DNA of 64,000 nucleotides from Oikopleura dioica (Eukaryota; Animalia; Chordata), in assembly GCA_907165135.1 (NCBI GenBank), contig OU015566.1, positions 3,534,001 to 3,598,000 of the forward strand, read 5' to 3'. The position numbers and the translations under genes were made by a program. Shown piece by piece: positions 1 through 24,900 of this stretch. The notes under the pieces are model-generated. The model did not search any database. It was not told the origin of the DNA and was given only the letters and a program-made list of their open reading frames with translations. Numbering within the stretch: the stretch's first letter is position 1; every line of letters begins with the position of its first letter.

Positions 1-931
1 TGGCTCTAGAAAAATCTCAGCTTCTTCGAGGATCCCTTTCGCCAAAAGAGCAAAAAGACCTCATCACCGGAACCACTTCCCTCGAGGAATGCATCAAAGA
101 CGCGTTTTTCATCCAAAGCGCGATTCCAGAAAACCCCGATTTGAAGAAAAAGGTCTTCAAGAACATCGCTGAATTGGTGGAAAAAGATGATGTTATCATT
201 TCTTCTTCAACTTCTTGTTTGATGCCAGATATAATTTTCAGCGACAGCGCTAGAAAAAGCCAGTCGATCATTTGCCACCCGGTCAATCCTCCTTATTACG
301 CTCCGATGGTCGAGATTATTCCTCACGATGAAACTACACAGGTCAGAAAACTGGGTCCGAAGCCCGATTACATTTGATTTCAGGATATCAGAAAACGTAC
401 TCGAGAAATCATGGCCGAAGTTGGTCAAAAACCCGTCCTCCTGAATCGAGCCATTGATGGCTTTGCCCTGAATAGAATCCAGTACTCCGTGATCAACGAA
501 AGCTGGAGACTCGTTCAGGATGGAATCATGTCTCCTGAAGATGTCGATACTGTTCTTACAGGTTTCTTTCTCTGAAAAAATTTTGGTGTTAAAATTTTTG
601 ATCAGCCGGTCTTGGAATGAGATACGCAACAATTGGACCTTTCGAGACAATTCATCTCAATGCCGAAGGAGTCAGGTAACCAAATCAGGCTCTAGAAACG
701 AATAAATCACGGTTTTCAAGGGAGTACATGGAGAAATTCGCGAGTTCAATAAAACGAGTCTCTGCCACTTTTGGCCCGACCCCTGATTACAGTGGAGAAG
801 CGCTGGAAAAAATCTGCGACATGATTGAGGCGAAAATTCCGCTCGACCAAATGGCAAAACGAAGGGCAAGAAGAGACAAACTTCTCGCCGGAATGGCGAA
901 ACTGCTCAAAGAACTTGATTCTGAAGAATAA
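1..931 (+). CDS. CRYL1: Lambda-crystallin / L-gulonate 3-dehydrogenase homolog, 5'-partial
   Basis: Spliced frame gives ..SAIPENPDLKKKVF..ISSSTSCL..CHPVNPPYYAPMVEIIP..LNRAIDGFALNRIQYSVINESWRLV..GLGMRYATIGPFETIHLNAEG. GT-AG introns 342-383, 562-605, 676-720; TAA 929-931. Confidence 0.9.
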
Positions 932-1159
932 AATTTCAAAAAAAAAAATGCAAAATGAATGAATTTCGAAAACATCGGTTCCAAAAAGATTGCAGCAGTC
1001 TCTAGAACTTGATTTACTTTTTACTTGTTATGCAACCATTACTATCAGTTTCAGTTTTTAAAGAAAAAGAACGCCCCGCACCCTCAAAAAACGGGGAAAA
1101 TGCAGGGTGTGCGCCCAAATTGGAACCAAGAAATTCCACAGTATTGGTTAGACAAAGGA

Positions 1160-3413
1160 ATGGATGCAGAAACTATTGAAAAATGGTACATTGTCGTCAG
1201 AATCAGTAAGTTTGTCGAAGAAAAGATAAGACAAATGCCTTTTAGTTGCACTTTGCTTAATTGCGATTTCGGTTTTCAATTATGTTTTCACATGGTGGAT
1301 TCGAAAGAACCTCTCTCCTCTGAAGAAAATCGGAGATGAACCCCTAACAAGAATCGAAAGATATGCTCAAGCTTGTAAGCTTGGCCAAGAACCTGCGATG
1401 AATTTCATCTCTTCCACCCTTATAACGAACGATAGAGTTTACATTATTCTTCGGATGATTCTCGCCCTTTGGTCATTATTTTTGACAGCTGCTGCTCCTG
1501 AAGGCTTGCGGACGCCATTTTTTGCTACGTATTATCCAACTGGTACAGTTTTTTTCTTCTTTTGTGGACCCTATTTTTGTGGACATTTTCTTCATTTTAA
1601 GGGGTTTTCGTGGGACACTTTTGCAAGGATAATGTTCCACTTTTGTGGACATTTGTCCAGCCGAAAAAAATTAAGAGGAAAAAATAGGGTGATTTTTTCA
1701 AAAATTAGAATTTTTTTGATAAGAAATCAATGGCTTTTACTGTTTAATTGACCAAAAATGGTAAAAAAAAGGCAAAAAAATGCGTTTCGATGATGAAATT
1801 TGCCAATTTTCGAAGAAAAATTTATCGAAGAAAAAATTTTAAGCCCCTATGGCGGGACATTTTTTGGAATACTGTTGCCCACTTTTGTGGACATTTTTAT
1901 GAAAATTTGGGACAAAAAATTTCCACAAAAAAGGAAAATAACTGTATATTTTTTGAATGTTTTTTTTAAAAATATTTAGCGACAATCATCACAATCTACG
2001 TCAATTTCAACCGCGAACTCATTGTCGAAGGATTCGGTTCTAAAGTTCAAACTGTCAACAAAATCATCTCATGGCTATTCAACTGCACGGTAAATTCTAT
2101 TGTAAATACCCTGATTCTGTCAATTCATTAAGGCCCCACTAAGACTCTTCATTGCAATTAGTTGGTGGACAAAATGGTTCGGAATCGCTAGATATCGAGA
2201 AATGTCTAGACCAGGGTTCTAAATCTGAGCTGAAAATCAGAAGTCGAGTCGAGTCGAGTCGAAAGGCTATCTGAAAATCCCAAGTCGAGTCGAGTCGAAA
2301 GCGTTTTTGAAAATCGCTAGTCGAGTCGAGTCGAGTCGAGTCGACTTAATCGACTTATTAGTCGAAAAGTCGAAAACTGGAAAAATATATAAATTTAGTC
2401 GAAAAAGTCGAAAATAAGTCGAAAAGTCGAAATTTAGTCGAAAGTCGAAAGAAAAGTCGAAAAGTCGAAAGCAAAATAGTGATTATTTTCGACTTTTTCG
2501 ACTAGATTTTCGACTTATTCGACTAGATTTTCGACTTATTCGACTAGATTTTTCGACTTTCTCCTTAACATTGCTCTCGACTTTTTCGACTAGTCGACAA
2601 TCTAGTTGACTCCTAGGGTCAAGTCGAGTCGAGTCGAGTCGACTTATTTTCCCAACCAGTCTAGTCGAGTCGAGCTAGTCTTTTCGACTTAGACTCGACT
2701 CGACTTCGACTTTAGTCGAAACTCGACTAGTCGATTTAGAACCCTGGTCTAGACCCGCGGATTTGCCAGTTTTTGTTCTTTTCAATAAAGAATTTGCACC
2801 GACCGTTTTCATGCTTACCGAGTTGCTTTGGTTCGATACTATGGGTAAATAAGAAAAATGTACAGTCATGATTAAATTTCAGTAACATTTTGCGGCGCTT
2901 GGGCAGCAACAATTACTGGCAATCTTGTCGTTCATGGAATTCTCAATGATATGGTCGACGAACCTCCTCAAGCTCTCGCGTAAGATCTCATTCTTCAACT
3001 CTTTCAGATATTTTTAGTGTCCCGATTGAACATCCGGCCGCACATCTCCATGTTTTCTATTTTTTCGTCTTTGGAATGCCGCTCATTCAATGGGTCTTGG
3101 CGACTTTTTGCTTGGTGAAAGTTTGGATCTTCAAGAAACTTCCTGTTATTGGTGAAAGATTACGCTTGCGCCAGGAATGGTTTATGAAATAATTCTAACA
3201 AAAATATTATATTAATCTTTGTTATTTTCAAGCGAAAACCAATCAAAGAAATGCATTGCAAATTTCCGAAAACGACAGGCTTTCAATGCTTACTTCAAAG
3301 AGAAAAGCGATGCTGATGAATTAAAACGAAGAGAAACAACAAAAAGTGTCTTTAAAGATCTTGGTCGATATTCAACTAGAAAATCTGTTGCGCCAAGAAG
3401 AATCAAAGCATAG
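1160..3413 (+). CDS. Multi-pass membrane protein of unknown family; one exon interrupted by a hAT-type MITE
   Basis: ATG 1160 (MDAETIEKWYIVVRI/IALCLIAISVFNYVFTWWI..), several hydrophobic segments, in-phase GT-AG junctions (e.g. 1543-1979), stop 3411-3413. Confidence 0.65.
1546..1944. mobile_element. Tc1/mariner-type MITE (TA target duplication), intronic
   Basis: TA|CAGTT..AACTG|TA, imperfect ~24-bp TIRs, internal TTTGTGGACATTTT subrepeats shared with the 7437-7846 element. Confidence 0.8.
2212..2746. mobile_element. hAT-type non-autonomous element with internal (GTCGA)n/(TCGAC)n foldback repeats
   Basis: Perfect 14-bp TIR CAGGGTTCTAAATC / GATTTAGAACCCTG; identical 8-bp flanks GTCTAGAC at 2204-2211 and 2747-2754, matching the NTCTAGAN target preference of Charlie-type hAT elements. 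Confidence 0.9.
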
Positions 3414-3668
3414 AAACTCAGAGCGTTTTCTTCAAAAATACAATATTAATAAATTTATTCTTCAGAAATAATAATCAAAATACCGGATATCAGAGGCTGA
3501 TGAAATGAAGTCCCGGGGTTTTAATTCTCTCCAAATAAAACTCATCGTCTTTTTTATCAAAAATCAGTTTGAAGGAGTCCATTTCTGAATTTGCATAAAT
3601 AAATATCTCGCCATAGTTTTCTTTTCTCGAGTTTTTAAAGCATTATACGCTTCATTGTGAGATCGCTC

Positions 3669-5887: not shown

Positions 5888-8315
5888 TCAGTTATTCGCG
5901 GCGCAGGAAGGAAAGTCCCCACAATCCGACCACCACTCTACTCCGCACTCGCCATAGTAGTCCATCACATCGTGGATTATATTGTAAGAAGTTTTGAAAA
6001 TGTGGTGATTCGAGCACGTGATTTCCAGCTGGCTCTCGCCAACTAGCTCGTCCGCAAGGTGATACCCGTCCTTGCACTTGATTCGGCACTAGAATTTCAA
6101 TTTAAAATTCACCGCGGACTCGTGTTTAGAATTTACCTTGGATCCATATTTCACCTTGCCCCGGACTCGCTCATCTTCGTGGTCTTCTGGCCAGTATTCG
6201 TCGCAATCCAGCTCCTGGAATTCCGCCTCTGGGTTGCCATCGATCCAGTTAGGATCTTCAAAGCCTTCGGAAAATGTTCCGATCAAGTCATCAATATTCG
6301 GCGAGCAAGCAGCGACCTCGCATCGTTGGATTTTATTCTCGCTGAAAACGCATCGTCCAAGCTCATTGCACTCACAGGTCGAAGTTTTCGAAAACCACGT
6401 GCCGTAAATTTCTGTTTCCTGGCATTTAGCTTGACAAACTGCTCCCTGAGGAAAGCCATCGACCATGGCTTGGGCGTAGTCGATTTGGACGCCATCAGCT
6501 GTCTTGCAGTCCATTTCGTTCCCGTCCAAGTTATCGGGCCAGTATCGCTCGGGATTCGGGAAGCAAATAGCTGGCTCGCAGTTGGCCAGGTTTGTCTTCC
6601 ACTGACATCGTGTTGCGTTTCGGCAGTCGCAATTCTTTGTCGTCTTTCTTCCTCGGATGACGAAGCCAGGTGGACAGGATTTTTCGCAAAGAGATTGGTC
6701 GGCGTTGGAATCGGTGCAATCCCAGAGCATGTCGGAGGGAGAGATGCCGAGGGCGATTTCGTAGTCGGAAATTGGGATGACGGAGGGGCAGTGCCAATCG
6801 GCTGGGGGAGCAGGAGTGGTGCTCGTTGTTGTGGTCGTGGTTGTGGTGGTGGTGGAGGTCGTGGTGGAAGTGGTGGTGGTGGAGGTTGTTGTAGAAGATG
6901 CGGTTGAAGAAGTTGTAGAAGGCGTGGTCGTGATTGGAGTAGTTGTTGATGTCGTTGTCGACGTTGTTGTTGTAGCAACATCACACGGGGTTACATAAGG
7001 AACCCCATTCCATTTGGTATGGTTGATGCTTTAATTTGTTTTATCAAAAATACACGTCCTGCTGGAGCGATCATTTAGTTTAACGAGTTTATCTCCATGT
7101 TTTTAACTAAACGCAGGAAGCTAGATTAGATGATATTTTGGGATCGAGATTGTAGATTCTATAATGATTCCAACAATGATGCAACATTTTCCTTGCGATG
7201 CTTCCTCGGAAATTGAAAAAGTAGTTGCAGTTGCTGCCATCACACACGCATTTGAGTTTTTTGTTCGATGTGAGTTTTGTTCCATTCGGCTTAAAAAATG
7301 ATTTTAAAAGCTGTCGTCAAAAATCGACGAAAAACGTGGTCATTTTCTTTAACGACGGGATACCCTTAAATTACCACAGACCTGATTGCATTCTCTGAAG
7401 CAGACGTTGTTCTCTGCCTCAAGCCCGCTTGCTGTACAGTTTTTTATGGAATTTGTGGACATCAAATTTGTGGACATTTTTCAGATTATAAGGGGTTTTC
7501 TTGGGACACATTCTAAAAAAGAGGGTATCAAATTTGTGGACATTTTTTGTCAATTGATATCTTTTACTTCTAAATTTATAGTCGTACTTTCGTAATTGAA
7601 GCCAATTTTATCTGCAAAGAACTGTTTTTCGTCAAAAATCTTAATTTTTGTTTAGATTTACGTCTTTAGATTCAATCTTGTATTCTTTTTCTCATTATTT
7701 TTTGAGAAAAATCATCAAATTTTCTTTCTAGGAAAAAATTTAAACAAGTTCGTTGGGACATTTTTTTCGAGGCTCTGTATCAAATTTGTGGACATTTTTC
7801 AGAAAACTAGGGGACAAAAAATGTCCACAAATTCCATAAAAAACTGTATATCCTCTTTTGCAACCATCAGATCTCGTGTACGTCTTCGTATTCCAAATTC
7901 CCAAGTCAGCCGGATTGCATCCTTTTTCGATACATTCTGGGACGTCTTCGACCAAACTGCCATCAGAGTAGCACTTGATCGTACCAAATTGCTTCTTGTC
8001 GGCCGAGCAGCTGACGAACCAATCGGAGAAGGTTCCAGATTCATGGAGGAGGATTTGAGCTTGCTTTCGGATCTTGCCCTTGTTGGTCAAGGTTTGGCCC
8101 TTTATAGCTCCGCGGAGGAGGAGGGTGGAATTGGAGAGGAGGTGCGAGATGTCGCATCCTAAGAATGATCTTCAGAAAAATGATATTTCAGGGGAGGTTT
8201 TTATGAAAAGAATCTCTTTGTTATCTTCTGAAAAATTTTGAAAAAAAATCTCTCTTTTCTTACCGACAGTAGACGCAGCCGCCTGAGAAATCAAAAATGC
8301 CGACGAAAGTTTCAT
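5888..8315 (-). CDS. Secreted Cys-rich protein with sushi/CCP-like modules and a Thr/Pro-rich linker; one exon interrupted by a Tc1-type MITE
   Basis: Signal-like MKLSSAFLISQAAASTV at ATG 8315; CCP-like blocks (C..VCQAKCQET..C, CRIKCKDGY); TTT/P tract ~6820-6980; last exon ..WWSDCGDFPSCAANN*. Confidence 0.75.
7437..7846. mobile_element. Tc1/mariner-type MITE (TA target duplication) inside a coding exon
   Basis: Perfect 26-bp TIR CAGTTTTTTATGGAATTTGTGGACAT; TA at 7435-7436 and 7847-7848. Confidence 0.9.
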
Positions 8316-21963: not shown

Positions 21964-24900
21964 ATGAAGATTTCGCTGCTTTTTGGAGTCGTCTTTGGCT
22001 CAGTGCAAATTGAGCCTCTTTATTGGAATACGACTAATCCAGTGTAAGTTTTTCAAGATGAAATTTTGATTTTTTTTTATTGCAAAAATTATATTTATTA
22101 TCAATTCAGAAGGCTTTTCCCTTATTTTTTGTAAAATTTTAAATTAAAAATTGCTTTTTAAAAATTTTTTTTCAATAAAATTTATGATTTTTATGCAAAA
22201 TGTTGAAGTCTGAACGAAATAATATGCTGCAAAAAAGTTCTAGCGCTCCCGTTTCCTTTGTAAAAATCGTTTATTTTTGCTTTCGCCCATACACTGTGCC
22301 CTTCCCTTAACAAAAATACTTCATTTTTTCTTTCGTAATTTATTTTCATTCTTCACTAGAATATTAAGGGACCTGGGCGAGCAGCGCGGAGCCAAACTTC
22401 ACGGGCTCGTAGCTTATCTTAGAAGTAAGATTTTTAAGAATTTCTTTTTGCAAATCATATCTACAAACATTCAGCTTTCTCTACCTTTTTTCAGAATTTC
22501 TCTATCATTACCGGTTGATGAACTAGAGAGAAAAAGAGAAGAGCAACTTCAAAAGGCATCAAGTCCTGCAAACTAAATTTTATCTTCCTGAAACTAGCAC
22601 CATTGAAAAGCCCGTTTAATTCTGCACAGATTCCACCTAATGCGCAAATACGGGACAGTACCTATTGGCGATAGAGGCTTGATAAACAAGATAACTGAGC
22701 GCGCACTCAGCGGGAATCATGTCCCGGAAGGCCAAAATAGCTTCATCAGAGCGTCCTACTGCGCCGCGACCAGCTGAGCGCGCTAAGTAACTTTGTTTAT
22801 TTGGCGTTACTTGGCGATAAGTACGTATTTAGCTTTGCGCATTAGGTGGAATCTGTGCAGAATTAAACGGGCTTTTTAATGGTGCTAGTTTCAGGAAGAT
22901 AAAATTTAGTTTGCAGGACTTGATGCCTTTTGAAGTTGCTCTTCTCTTTTTCTCTCTAGTTCATCAACCGGTAATGATAGAAAAATTCTGAAAATAGGTA
23001 GAGAAAGCTGAATGTTTGCAGATATGATTTGCAAAAAGAAATTCTTAAAAATCTCACTTCTAAGATAAGCTGCGAGCCCGTGAAGTTCGGCTCCGCGCTG
23101 CTCGCCCAGGTCCCTTAAAGAAGCTCCCTTTTCTTCCATTTTCTCCAATTTCCGCTTGAGCAAAACCAAACAAGCAGGAAAAAAGGGGATGAAACAGCCG
23201 CCCCATGTCACTTTTTCCACATGATTACCCTCGATTCTAGCGCTTGAAAGATGTGAGTGTGTGTAAGCGCCTTAATTTATTTTCTTTTTCTTTTGTGAAA
23301 AAAGGAGGAACATGTTTCCATTTGGCCGGCTGCAGGAGGCGCTTTAGTGGTGTTTGTTTTGAAGATAACATAAACTTCCGACTTATCGCTGTGCCGGACA
23401 TCCACTTGCACCAAATGAAAAATGATTCGTTATGGGAAGGAAAGAAAGAAGGTTTGGCCATTTTAGAAGCAATCGAAAATTGTGGCAGAAAAGCTTTTCT
23501 AAATGTTCAATCAGAGCTTTTGATTGGCTAAGAGTGATTTCTACAGATAGATCATGATATGGGGTCTTGGAAGGTGAGGAGTCCAAATATGCAGGTGGTA
23601 TCACCTCGTTGTCTCGGGACCGTGCAGATGCGAGCAAGTGCGGCGGATCAATAGCGTAAACTGCCCTGTATCTCAGATAAAATCAACATCCGGTACCCCC
23701 CTTAGAGAGATAATTTGACGTAAACTGGACATTTGGATAATTTATTTCGACGATGAAATACAAAAATGTACGAGATTTTGATAAATACACAATGATAGAT
23801 GAAAATGACTTTTGCGGAGCAAAATCGGGACCTCAATATTTTTTGTGCTCATCTTGTAGCGCAGGTTCTGAGGAGTCGAATGGTACGATTTTTATGGTCC
23901 AAAGCTTTGAAAAATATCCGATTCTAGCGCTTCAAGAACCTGAAAATGGCAAGTTTTGACGCCCTGTATCTCCAAAAATCTTCGGAAAAAGTATGGAGAT
24001 ATGGGTATCATTCGAAAGCCCAGCCAAAATTGTGGTTGCGCAGTTGGTGCGCAAGAGAAAACGACGAAAAAAAATTTTTACTAAAAAGTTCACGCTTAAA
24101 AATATATTCTTTTGCTTCGAATTTTCGGCTGCAAAACGAGTGCGCAACCACAGTTTGAGCTGGGCTTTCGAATGGTACCATAATCTCCAAACTTTTTTCG
24201 AAAATTTTCGGAGATAGAGGGCGTCAAAGGATTTTTTCTTTAGGGGAGCCTATGACGTCATTTATGATGACTCAGACCGTCAAAACTATATGAATCGACT
24301 CCTCAGGAGTCGCTCTTTCAGATGAGCACAAGAAACATGGGGGGTAGAATTTTGTTCCGAAAAACTCATTTTCATGTATCCAATGAATATGAATTTGTAC
24401 AAATTATAATCCGCAATAAGACTGATTCAAACTGGACGATTGGCTCATCTGGAGAGCCTAATTGATGGCAAATTTCTCGGATATTTCTAGGAGATCATTA
24501 TAAAAAGGATCTTTTAAATTGAATTGACCTTCGTTGGCAATCTTCAGGCTGATTCGAAATTTCCTCAAACCAACAACAAAGTGCGCATTGATCCGCAGAG
24601 CCTTTCTAATGCCCGACAAGTATTTGTATACAAGCCAATAAAAAGCCCTTTCGAACAAATTCGTTATATCTTGATCCATCTGTATAAATCCTTTTCGCCA
24701 AAACTTGATTTTTGGCAGCGAAAATGTCGCGAATCTTTGATTTTCGAGGTCGAAATTCGGACAAACGCCACTCAAGAACTTTTGACTCTAATCCCTCTTC
24801 TCTTCCCCTCCCTAAAGTCACTTCTTCGCGTGACATTTTTTCTTCGAAAGAAATCACAAAAATTGATTATAAGACAATAAAGATTTAGTGGCTAAAAATG

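What the first reader, a model, noticed from the sequence alone, without database searches (positions are those of the whole stretch)
2204..2754. Introner-like event: hAT MITE in a coding exon whose target duplication supplies in-frame splice sites
Seen: the exon reads ..TAT CGA GAA ATG TCT AGA [element] TCT AGA CCC GCG GAT TTG... Removing the element plus one GTCTAGAC copy restores an open frame (YREMSRPADLPVFVLFNK). The left copy starts with GT (2204) and the right copy contains CTAG (AG ends 2752). Splicing 2204-2752 (549 nt) gives GAA AT/A CCC = EIPAD, in frame, losing only 6 nt. A second GT in the TIR (2216) is also in frame. Inference: any insertion of this family at a GTCTAGAN site in sense orientation creates a frame-preserving GT-AG intron regardless of element length. 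DNA transposons co-opting target duplications as splice sites is an established route of intron gain; this looks like an instance.
Basis: partly seen in the sequence, partly recalled or inferred. Interest (0 to 1): 0.8.

Follow-up and report, generated by a model that had tools for sequence, protein, structure and literature searches.

The report
Young hAT transposon inside coding exon
A small, recently inserted "cut-and-paste" transposon sits in the middle of a protein-coding exon of a gene from an Oikopleura-type marine tunicate; it could in principle be spliced out in frame, but nothing here shows that it is, and the proposed splice signals are weak.

Summary
A 535-nt non-autonomous hAT-type element lies at 2212-2746. 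It has perfect 14-nt inverted ends (CAGGGTTCTAAATC) and a perfect 8-bp target duplication (GTCTAGAC). It interrupts exon 4 of an otherwise intact seven-exon gene (1100-3413, + strand).

The gene belongs to a ~360-aa membrane-protein family whose only named members are from Oikopleura dioica. In six paralogues from two O. dioica genomes this exon is uninterrupted. Removing the element plus one duplication restores the conserved RYR[D/E]M[S]R motif.

Splicing 2204-2752 loses 6 nt and 2216-2752 adds 6 nt; both stay in frame.

The interpretation, intron birth, is untested. The three raw-read RNA runs came from a different lineage. The one same-lineage metatranscriptome shows that the gene is expressed and spliced elsewhere, but it has no contig across the element.

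In silico the proposed donors score -4.4 and -1.9 bits; 39 real family introns score at least 2.3. Both proposed sites also lie in a 22-bp perfect stem.

My best reading is a young, probably polymorphic insertion allele that truncates the protein or is rescued only inefficiently. It is raw material for an intron, not a shown intron.

First readers of this scan noted many similar hAT elements in exons elsewhere in this genome; none has been checked.

The parts
2204..2211 (.). Left copy of the 8-bp target-site duplication, GTCTAGAC (palindromic).
   Evidence: D15. The flanks of other copies differ from here outward.
2212..2746 (.). Non-autonomous hAT-type element (MITE), 535 nt. It is built of AGTCGA/TCGACT repeats, has no open reading frame, and folds into one long hairpin.
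   Evidence: Element ends are confirmed by loose ends at 2212 and 2746 and by contigs L002-L006.
2212..2225 (+). Left terminal inverted repeat, CAGGGTTCTAAATC. It holds the second GT (2216).
   Evidence: exact match.
2733..2746 (-). Right terminal inverted repeat. On the + strand it reads GATTTAGAACCCTG and carries a TTTAG (AG at 2738-2739).
   Evidence: exact match. Acceptor score 1.5 bits. Paired with the 2204 donor it would give a frameshift and a TAG stop (my reading).
2747..2754 (.). Right copy of the target-site duplication.
   Evidence: Acceptor score 2.4 bits, 7th percentile of 39 family introns.
1100..1205 (+). Exon 1 (starts at ATG 1100).
   Evidence: Intron position and phase match six paralogues.
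1246..1542 (+). Exon 2.
   Evidence: A metatranscriptome contig covers 1258-1468 with one difference (table 8). 63-66% identical to O. dioica family proteins.
1980..2089 (+). Exon 3.
2133..2211 (+). Exon 4, part upstream of the element (...WWTKWFGIARYREMSR).
2755..2844 (+). Exon 4, part downstream of the element (PADLPVFVLFNKEFAP...).
2883..2979 (+). Exon 5.
   Evidence: The 2979|3018 junction is seen in a transcript contig (tables 5 and 8).
3018..3174 (+). Exon 6.
   Evidence: table 8 (record 4, no differences).
3175..3248 (+). Intron 6, non-canonical GA-AG, 74 nt.
   Evidence: table 5 (joint 3172|3247, ambiguous by 2 nt, so GA..AG). Same position and GA-AG ends in paralogues P0002, P0018 and P0020.
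3249..3413 (+). Exon 7, ending with the TAG stop at 3411-3413.

Best explanation
A non-autonomous hAT-superfamily transposon recently inserted into the fourth coding exon of an expressed, otherwise intact gene. The gene belongs to an Oikopleura-type larvacean and encodes a lineage-restricted multi-pass membrane protein; a FAR-17a/AIG1/Rost-like fold is a lead only.

Shown: the element, its ends, its 8-bp duplication, its exonic position and the truncation caused by read-through.

Inferred: the insertion is young and probably still polymorphic. As it stands it mainly gives a truncated or mis-spliced message, that is, a null or weak allele in a gene family with several paralogues. The GT and AG carried by the duplicated target could give an in-frame product, but they are weak and base-paired to each other. 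I therefore expect at most inefficient rescue. This is raw material for intron gain, not an established intron.
For: - Structure and boundaries.
- Exonic position: six paralogues from two O. dioica assemblies have no intron anywhere in this exon and read RY[R/K]DM[S/A/P/T]R at the site (R-V-R-D-I-S-R in P0018), with the same length as the empty-site reading.
- Read-through stops after residue 200.
- Donor scores are -4.4 bits (2204) and -1.9 bits (2216), against a minimum of 2.3 and a median of 7.4 for 39 family introns. The 2752 acceptor scores 2.4 (7th percentile).
- No G*-AG pair around the element exceeds 9.1 bits, while the median real donor and acceptor add up to about 14. The best pair is out of frame.
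- Both proposed sites lie in a 22-bp perfect stem of a hairpin of -254.9 kcal/mol (z = -14.5).
- Perfect inverted ends and duplication indicate a recent event.
- The family has at least six paralogues in one genome, so loss of one copy is plausible.
- Skipping exon 4 is not an escape, because 169 nt is not a multiple of 3.
Against: - No RNA from an animal carrying this insertion was seen, so weak rescue is a prediction from a small position-weight matrix (39 introns) and a folding calculation.
- O. dioica is reported to use about 11-12% non-GT/AG introns (PMC8008620), so its spliceosome is permissive.
- Non-GT introns of this same gene family carry terminal stems and in-register direct repeats at both junctions. 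They look like old insertions now spliced in the register of a duplication.
- Unverified notes of this scan list many hAT elements in exons of this genome, some in genes that should be essential. If true, many such insertions must be tolerated.
- The gene is expressed in a wild sample.
Confidence: 0.5

Rival explanations
1. The element is removed as a canonical GT-AG intron, using the GT at the start of the left duplication (2204) or in the inverted repeat (2216) and the AG in the right duplication (2752). This gives an in-frame, functional message: a newborn intron.
For: The sites exist and are in frame, with net changes of -6 or +6 nt. All three GT dinucleotides between 2177 and 2216 are in frame with AG 2752 (my count). 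CTAG-type acceptors are used elsewhere in the family. Target duplications that supply splice sites are an established route to introns (PMC11282704). The host is permissive.
Against: The donors score below every one of 39 real family donors, and positions +3 to +5 do not match the AAG shared by both GT and non-GT family donors. The sites are paired in a 22-bp stem. The 2204-2752 product loses the conserved M and invariant R. No junction of this kind was found in 241 million metagenome and metatranscriptome records.
Confidence: 0.2
2. The element is removed by non-canonical or cryptic splicing at other boundaries, helped by pairing of its ends. The models are the GA/GC-AG introns of this family and the MITE-derived introns of Fritillaria borealis. 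The products would be partly functional and imprecise.
For: Family non-GT introns have longer end-pairing stems than GT introns (mean 6.4 vs 4.5 nt, Mann-Whitney p = 0.007). Four of eight have in-register junction repeats of at least 5 nt, against none of 31 GT introns. [quoted passage not shown] In-frame GA-AG pairs exist, for example 2182-2715 and 2182-2730.
Against: Exact removal in the register of the duplication would need an AC-AG intron (2210-2752), whereas all eight family precedents start with G. The in-frame GA pairs replace 8-12 conserved residues. There is no RNA evidence.
Confidence: 0.15
3. The locus is irrelevant: a dead or silent gene, or an assembly artefact that placed a repeat copy in the exon.
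For: The DNA runs of the same lineage hold only 0.49-0.62 of the sampled words of 2000-3000, so the element could not be confirmed in independent reads. The gene's product is not in the protein database.
Against: Exons 2 and 5-7 are transcribed and correctly spliced in a wild sample, with at most one difference. All seven exons are open, with conserved intron positions. A perfect 8-bp duplication at the exact element ends is the signature of real transposition, not of misassembly.
Confidence: 0.05

Closest known systems
Introners: intron-generating DNA transposons (Micromonas, Aureococcus and others; review PMC11282704; surveys PMC9860276 and PMC12130899)
   Same: A short element with inverted ends and a target duplication sits in coding sequence, and the duplication could supply splice-site dinucleotides. 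An Oikopleura sp. genome from Tara Oceans is already listed with 33 introner copies in Dataset S01 of PMC9860276.
   Different: Splicing is not shown here. The element brings no good splice site of its own. The only canonical route is imprecise (-6 or +6 nt). This window holds one copy, and no enrichment in genes was tested.
MITE-derived non-canonical introns of the larvacean Fritillaria borealis (Henriet et al. 2019, as described in bioRxiv 10.1101/2025.08.15.670264 and PMC11282704)
   Same: Same animal class. Non-autonomous DNA transposons lie in genes, their inverted ends sit at the intron borders, and the major spliceosome is permissive.
   Different: In F. borealis most introns are non-GT/AG (AG-AC, AG-AT) and removal is documented. 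In this gene five of six introns are GT-AG, and removal of this element is undocumented.
Splicing of the maize hAT element Ds from waxy and adh1 pre-mRNA, and of Tc1 from C. elegans pre-mRNAs (Wessler 1987; Rushforth and Anderson 1996; from my own knowledge, not checked here)
   Same: An exonic insertion of a DNA transposon, in the Ds case from the same superfamily, can be removed imprecisely through cryptic sites in or next to its ends. This gives leaky alleles.
   Different: Those cases are mutant alleles shown by cDNA. Here there is no cDNA, and the host has much shorter typical introns (about 40-50 nt) than the 537-549 nt needed.
GA-AG and GC-AG introns of the same gene family in O. dioica
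   Same: Terminal stems and in-register direct repeats at both junctions suggest old insertions now spliced in the register of a duplication.
   Different: All begin with G followed by A-A/T-G at +3 to +5, and they are short (42-77 nt; two are 218 and 555 nt). The new element offers AC at the exact register, or GTCTAG and GTTCTA at the shifted ones.

Membership tests
hAT-superfamily non-autonomous element (MITE) | 8-bp target-site duplication | tested here: met
   GTCTAGAC lies on both sides. The element ends are fixed independently by other copies.
hAT-superfamily non-autonomous element (MITE) | Short terminal inverted repeats beginning CAG/TAG | tested here: met
   14 of 14 nt, CAGGGTTCTAAATC.
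hAT-superfamily non-autonomous element (MITE) | Target preference nTnnnnAn (consensus recalled from the literature) | tested here: met
   In six flanks (this copy plus L002-L006), T at position 2 in 5 of 6 and A at position 7 in 5 of 6. The sample is small.
hAT-superfamily non-autonomous element (MITE) | Small, non-coding, multicopy | tested here: met
   535 nt with stops in all frames. Reads from several other loci, and five metagenome contigs, carry the same end.
hAT-superfamily non-autonomous element (MITE) | A partner element with the same ends that encodes a hAT transposase | not tested
   None in the window (one search found no second copy).
Introner / transposon-born spliceosomal intron | Lies where relatives have uninterrupted coding sequence | tested here: met
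   Six paralogues have no intron in this exon, and the conserved motif spans the site.
Introner / transposon-born spliceosomal intron | Removed from mature mRNA by the spliceosome | tested here: inconclusive
   The three raw-read RNA runs were of another lineage (reads 90-95% alike, only element-family reads). The same-lineage metatranscriptome has no contig over 2041-2880. A junction pattern had no hits in metagenome contigs.
Introner / transposon-born spliceosomal intron | Usable splice sites supplied by the element or its duplication | tested here: inconclusive
   GT and AG are present and in frame. The donors score -4.4 and -1.9 bits against at least 2.3 for 39 real introns, and the sites are base-paired. 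The matrix is small and the host is permissive.
Introner / transposon-born spliceosomal intron | Many copies of the family form introns across the genome | not tested
   Only unverified first-reader notes on other windows.
Fritillaria-type MITE-derived non-canonical intron | Splice junctions at the inverted-repeat ends with non-GT/AG dinucleotides, shown by RNA | not testable with these tools

The most novel reading that the evidence does not exclude
This Oikopleura lineage may be in an ongoing burst in which hAT elements land in coding exons and are removed by a permissive spliceosome, using dinucleotides in the target duplication or the inverted ends. This copy would then be a newborn, still imprecise intron (-6 or +6 nt) in an animal. 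The family's GA/GC-AG introns, with terminal stems and junction repeats, would be the aged products of the same process.
Probability: 0.25. Interest if true: 0.7.

Novelty: new member of a known kind. Interest (0 to 1): 0.38.

Why it matters
How new introns arise in animals is rarely seen directly. Larvaceans are the animals with the fastest known intron turnover, and in Fritillaria most introns trace to transposons.

A perfectly fresh element in an exon of an expressed gene, with its empty site visible in paralogues, is a clean test case. One RT-PCR on genotyped carriers would show whether an Oikopleura spliceosome can rescue such an insertion at once, or whether the insertion is simply a broken allele awaiting selection.

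On present evidence it is an ordinary young transposon insertion with an untested potential.

Tried and rejected
1. Reads laid on 1-3600 from three raw-read RNA runs carrying the species label, plus one metatranscriptome. The raw-read runs were another lineage: all reads fitted only partly, most were 90-95% alike, and nearly all came from other copies of the element.

2. Metagenome scan for any spliced or empty-site form, using anchors at 2161-2175 and 2791-2804 with a 50-80 nt gap: no hits.

3. Metagenome scan with the last 24 nt of the element: five contigs, all truncated or at contig ends. Only right flanks could be tabulated, so no full target-site census was possible.

4. Search for the gene's own annotated product, to see how annotators treated the element. 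It is not in the databases; the best relative is 61% identical.

5. A first attempt at a splice-site matrix from open-reading-frame-joined GT..AG candidates in the window drifted into noise and was discarded. It was replaced by 39 introns mapped exactly from annotated paralogues plus this gene.

6. Nematode origin, my first impression from the TTTCAG acceptors, was rejected. All named relatives are O. dioica, and the other holders are marine plankton samples.

7. A 22-nt inverted repeat with no duplication was rejected. Other copies end at ...CCCTG.

8. The long introns of paralogues (735, 555 and 218 nt) show no similarity to this element.

9. The Denoeud 2010 paper could not be read.

Full report
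**What is there**

Positions 2204-2754 hold a transposon insertion with textbook anatomy. An 8-bp direct repeat, GTCTAGAC (2204-2211 and 2747-2754), flanks a 535-nt element (2212-2746). The element's ends are a perfect 14-nt inverted repeat, CAGGGTTCTAAATC.

The inverted-repeat sequence occurs nowhere else in the 64-kb window; 0.41 matches at up to two mismatches are expected by chance. Because the duplicated octamer is a palindrome, the perfect inverted repeat extends to 22 nt (I6).

This raised the question of whether the octamer belongs to the element. It does not. Reads from other copies of the family diverge from the window exactly at 2212 and 2746 (loose ends). Five metagenome contigs that share the last 24 nt of the element carry unrelated sequence directly after ...CCCTG.

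The six flanks known (this one plus ATTGTTAT, GCCGGGAT, GTTGAGAC, CTCACATT and GTCATAAT) have T at position 2 in five cases and A at position 7 in five cases. That is the nTnnnnAn preference I recall for hAT elements.

The interior is made of AGTCGA and TCGACT repeats and has stops in every frame. As RNA it folds into one hairpin of -254.9 kcal/mol, 14 standard deviations below shuffled controls. It is a non-autonomous hAT-type MITE. The partner transposase was not sought.

**The host gene and organism**

The flanking frames belong to a seven-exon gene on the + strand:
- exon 1: 1100-1205
- exon 2: 1246-1542
- exon 3: 1980-2089
- exon 4: 2133-2844, which holds the element
- exon 5: 2883-2979
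- exon 6: 3018-3174
- exon 7: 3249-3413

All frames join. Exon 2 alone finds 14 cluster representatives in a library of 1.84 billion proteins. The full-length relatives that carry a name are Oikopleura dioica proteins, from the Bergen assembly GCA_000209535.1 and the Okinawa assembly GCA_907165135.1. The unnamed ones come from metagenome and other public assemblies.

The family has no Pfam domain. A feature and fold search points to FAR-17a/AIG1/Rost-like membrane proteins, as a lead only.

The window's protein is at most 61% identical to any database member, and its own product is not in the databases. The other holders of the DNA are marine plankton and marine metagenome samples. I take the organism to be a member of the O. 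dioica species complex other than the Bergen and Okinawa reference lineages. My first impression of a nematode was wrong.

**The insertion is in ancestral coding sequence**

I mapped the exons of six paralogues exactly onto their genomic loci. Their intron positions and phases match the window's gene. None has an intron anywhere in the exon that carries the element.

At the site itself, five of the six read R-Y-R-D-M-[S/A/P/T]-R; P0018 reads R-V-R-D-I-S-R. Removing the element plus one octamer from the window gives R-Y-R-E-M-S-R-P-A-D-L with no gap. This is as good an empty site as can be had without a second allele.

Left in place, the element ends the protein after residue 200. Skipping exon 4 would shift the frame, because the exon is 169 nt.

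**Is the gene alive?**

Yes, at least in the wild. A marine-plankton metatranscriptome (X1) has contigs identical or nearly identical to the window:
- over exon 2 (1258-1468, one difference);
- over exons 5-6-7, with the junctions 2979|3018 (GT-AG) and 3172|3247.

The second joint is ambiguous by two bases. The only reading with a terminal AG is a 74-nt GA-AG intron at 3175-3248. The same non-canonical intron, at the same position, is present in paralogues P0002, P0018 and P0020.

X1 has no contig between 2041 and 2880, so it says nothing about the element.

**The test that failed**

The decisive experiment was to lay RNA reads across the element. The three raw-read RNA runs available under the species label turned out to be another lineage. 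Every laid read fitted only partly. Most were 90-95% alike and came from other copies of the element. The neighbouring housekeeping exon (481-600) showed five fixed differences.

A scan of 241 million metagenome and metatranscriptome records for any form in which exon 4 is rejoined (50-80 nt between two exonic anchors) found nothing. Whether the element is spliced out therefore remains untested.

**What the sequence predicts**

Splicing from the first base of the left octamer to the sixth base of the right octamer removes L+14 nt of an L+8 nt insertion, a net loss of 6 nt whatever L is. The 2216 donor gives a net gain of 6 nt. Several points weigh against efficient use of these sites.

- *Donor strength.* I built a position-weight matrix from 39 introns (33 mapped in paralogues, 6 in this gene). 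Real donors score 2.3 to 10.8 bits (median 7.4) and real acceptors 0.4 to 10.6 bits (median 7.0). The proposed donors score -4.4 bits (2204, GTCTAG) and -1.9 bits (2216, GTTCTA). The 2752 acceptor scores 2.4 bits, the 7th percentile.
- *What real donors share.* Both the GT and the non-GT donors of the family have A-A/T-G at +3 to +5 (GTAAGT, GAAAGG, GAATGG, GCAAGA). The proposed donors have none of it.
The best pair reaches 9.1 bits and is out of frame. The median real donor and acceptor add up to about 14 bits.
- *A competing acceptor.* The TTTAG built into the right inverted repeat (AG at 2739) looks acceptor-like but scores only 1.5 bits. Combined with the 2204 donor it would produce a frameshift and an immediate TAG.
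- *Structure.* Both proposed sites lie in the 22-bp perfect terminal stem.
- *Product.* The 2204-2752 product replaces M-S-R by I, deleting the invariant R. The 2216-2752 product keeps the motif and adds P-G.

**What speaks for rescue**

O. dioica is reported to have 11-12% non-GT/AG introns (PMC8008620). [quoted passage not shown]

Within this very gene family, the eight non-GT introns differ from the 31 GT introns in two ways:
- Their first bases pair with a stretch ending 5-10 nt before the 3' end. The mean best stem is 6.4 nt against 4.5 nt (p = 0.007), and the arm sequences differ between paralogues at the same intron position.
- Four of the eight have in-register direct repeats of 5-7 nt across the two junctions (TCAG|GC, AG|GAATG, CTCAG|, TCAG|GA). 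No GT intron exceeds 3 nt.

That is what an old insertion spliced in the register of its own duplication would look like. The analogous exact removal here would be an AC-AG intron (2210-2752), whereas all eight precedents start with G.

First readers of this scan also flagged many other hAT elements in exons of this genome, some in genes such as CDC23. These notes are unchecked and I could not reach those windows.

**Verdict**

The perfect ends and duplication mean that the insertion is too young for the intact state of the rest of the gene to say anything about tolerance. In a genome this compact, a random insertion often hits an exon.

My best reading (0.5) is a young, probably polymorphic insertion allele. 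It truncates the protein or is rescued only inefficiently, in a family with several paralogues. Removal by other, non-canonical or cryptic sites gets 0.15. An artefact or a dead locus gets 0.05.

**Novelty**

Transposon-born introns, including the use of target duplications as splice sites, are established. An Oikopleura genome already appears in an introner survey with 33 copies (PMC9860276, Dataset S01). Larvacean MITE-derived introns are described for Fritillaria. At most this is a new member of a known kind.

Its value is as a clean test case, because one RT-PCR on genotyped carriers would settle it.

Noticed in passing
window 3175-3248: A 74-nt non-canonical GA-AG intron is confirmed by a metatranscriptome contig (joint 3172|3247, ambiguous by 2 nt). 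It sits at the same position, with GA-AG ends, in paralogues P0002, P0018 and P0020. P0021 has a GT-AG intron at this position, and the Okinawa paralogues P0019 and P0017 have none.
   Followed up: partly
L007-L011 and window: the eight non-GT introns of the gene family: The GA-AG and GC-AG introns have terminal stems (mean 6.4 vs 4.5 nt in GT introns, p = 0.007), with different arm sequences in paralogues at the same position. Four of the eight also have in-register direct repeats of 5-7 nt at both junctions, against none of 31 GT introns. This suggests that Oikopleura non-canonical introns are old insertions spliced in the register of a duplication, and perhaps that end-pairing is needed for their removal.
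   Followed up: partly
window 1546-1944: A 399-nt Tc1/mariner-type MITE (ends CAGTTTTTT...TTTGTGGAC, TA duplication) sits inside intron 2, starting three bases after the 5' splice site. It turns an ancestral ~36-nt intron into a 437-nt one and changes the donor from GTATAT to GTACAG.
   Followed up: partly
window 7437-7846: A second copy of the same Tc1-type MITE family, with long perfect inverted ends and a TA duplication. This is the element that another first-reader note places in a Cys-rich coding exon. I checked the element but not the exon claim.
   Followed up: partly
window 481-600 and 2212-2746 (runs X5, X6, X2): RNA runs filed under the same species label are a different lineage. They show five fixed differences in about 60 nt of a neighbouring exon, and the target gene is not covered. 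They still carry and transcribe the same hAT MITE family, with structural variants (a 356-nt internal replacement, a 42-nt replacement, rearranged copies).
   Followed up: no
L002 474-530 (JGI contig Ga0314699_10002023): The right flank of this metagenome copy is identical to the commonest loose end in run X5 (28 reads). One particular copy of the element is therefore retained in abundant polyadenylated RNA of the other lineage, about 200 nt upstream of a 292-codon open reading frame.
   Followed up: no
window 22367-23115: A roughly 750-nt stretch gives a nested series of perfect inverted 10-mers, that is, a long near-perfect palindrome of unknown nature.
   Followed up: no
L001, L007, L008 (Okinawa paralogues): Intron presence and absence vary among paralogues at otherwise conserved positions. 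P0017 lacks intron 3 and has a 735-nt intron 5, P0018 lacks intron 4, and P0019 and P0017 lack the GA-AG intron.
   Followed up: no
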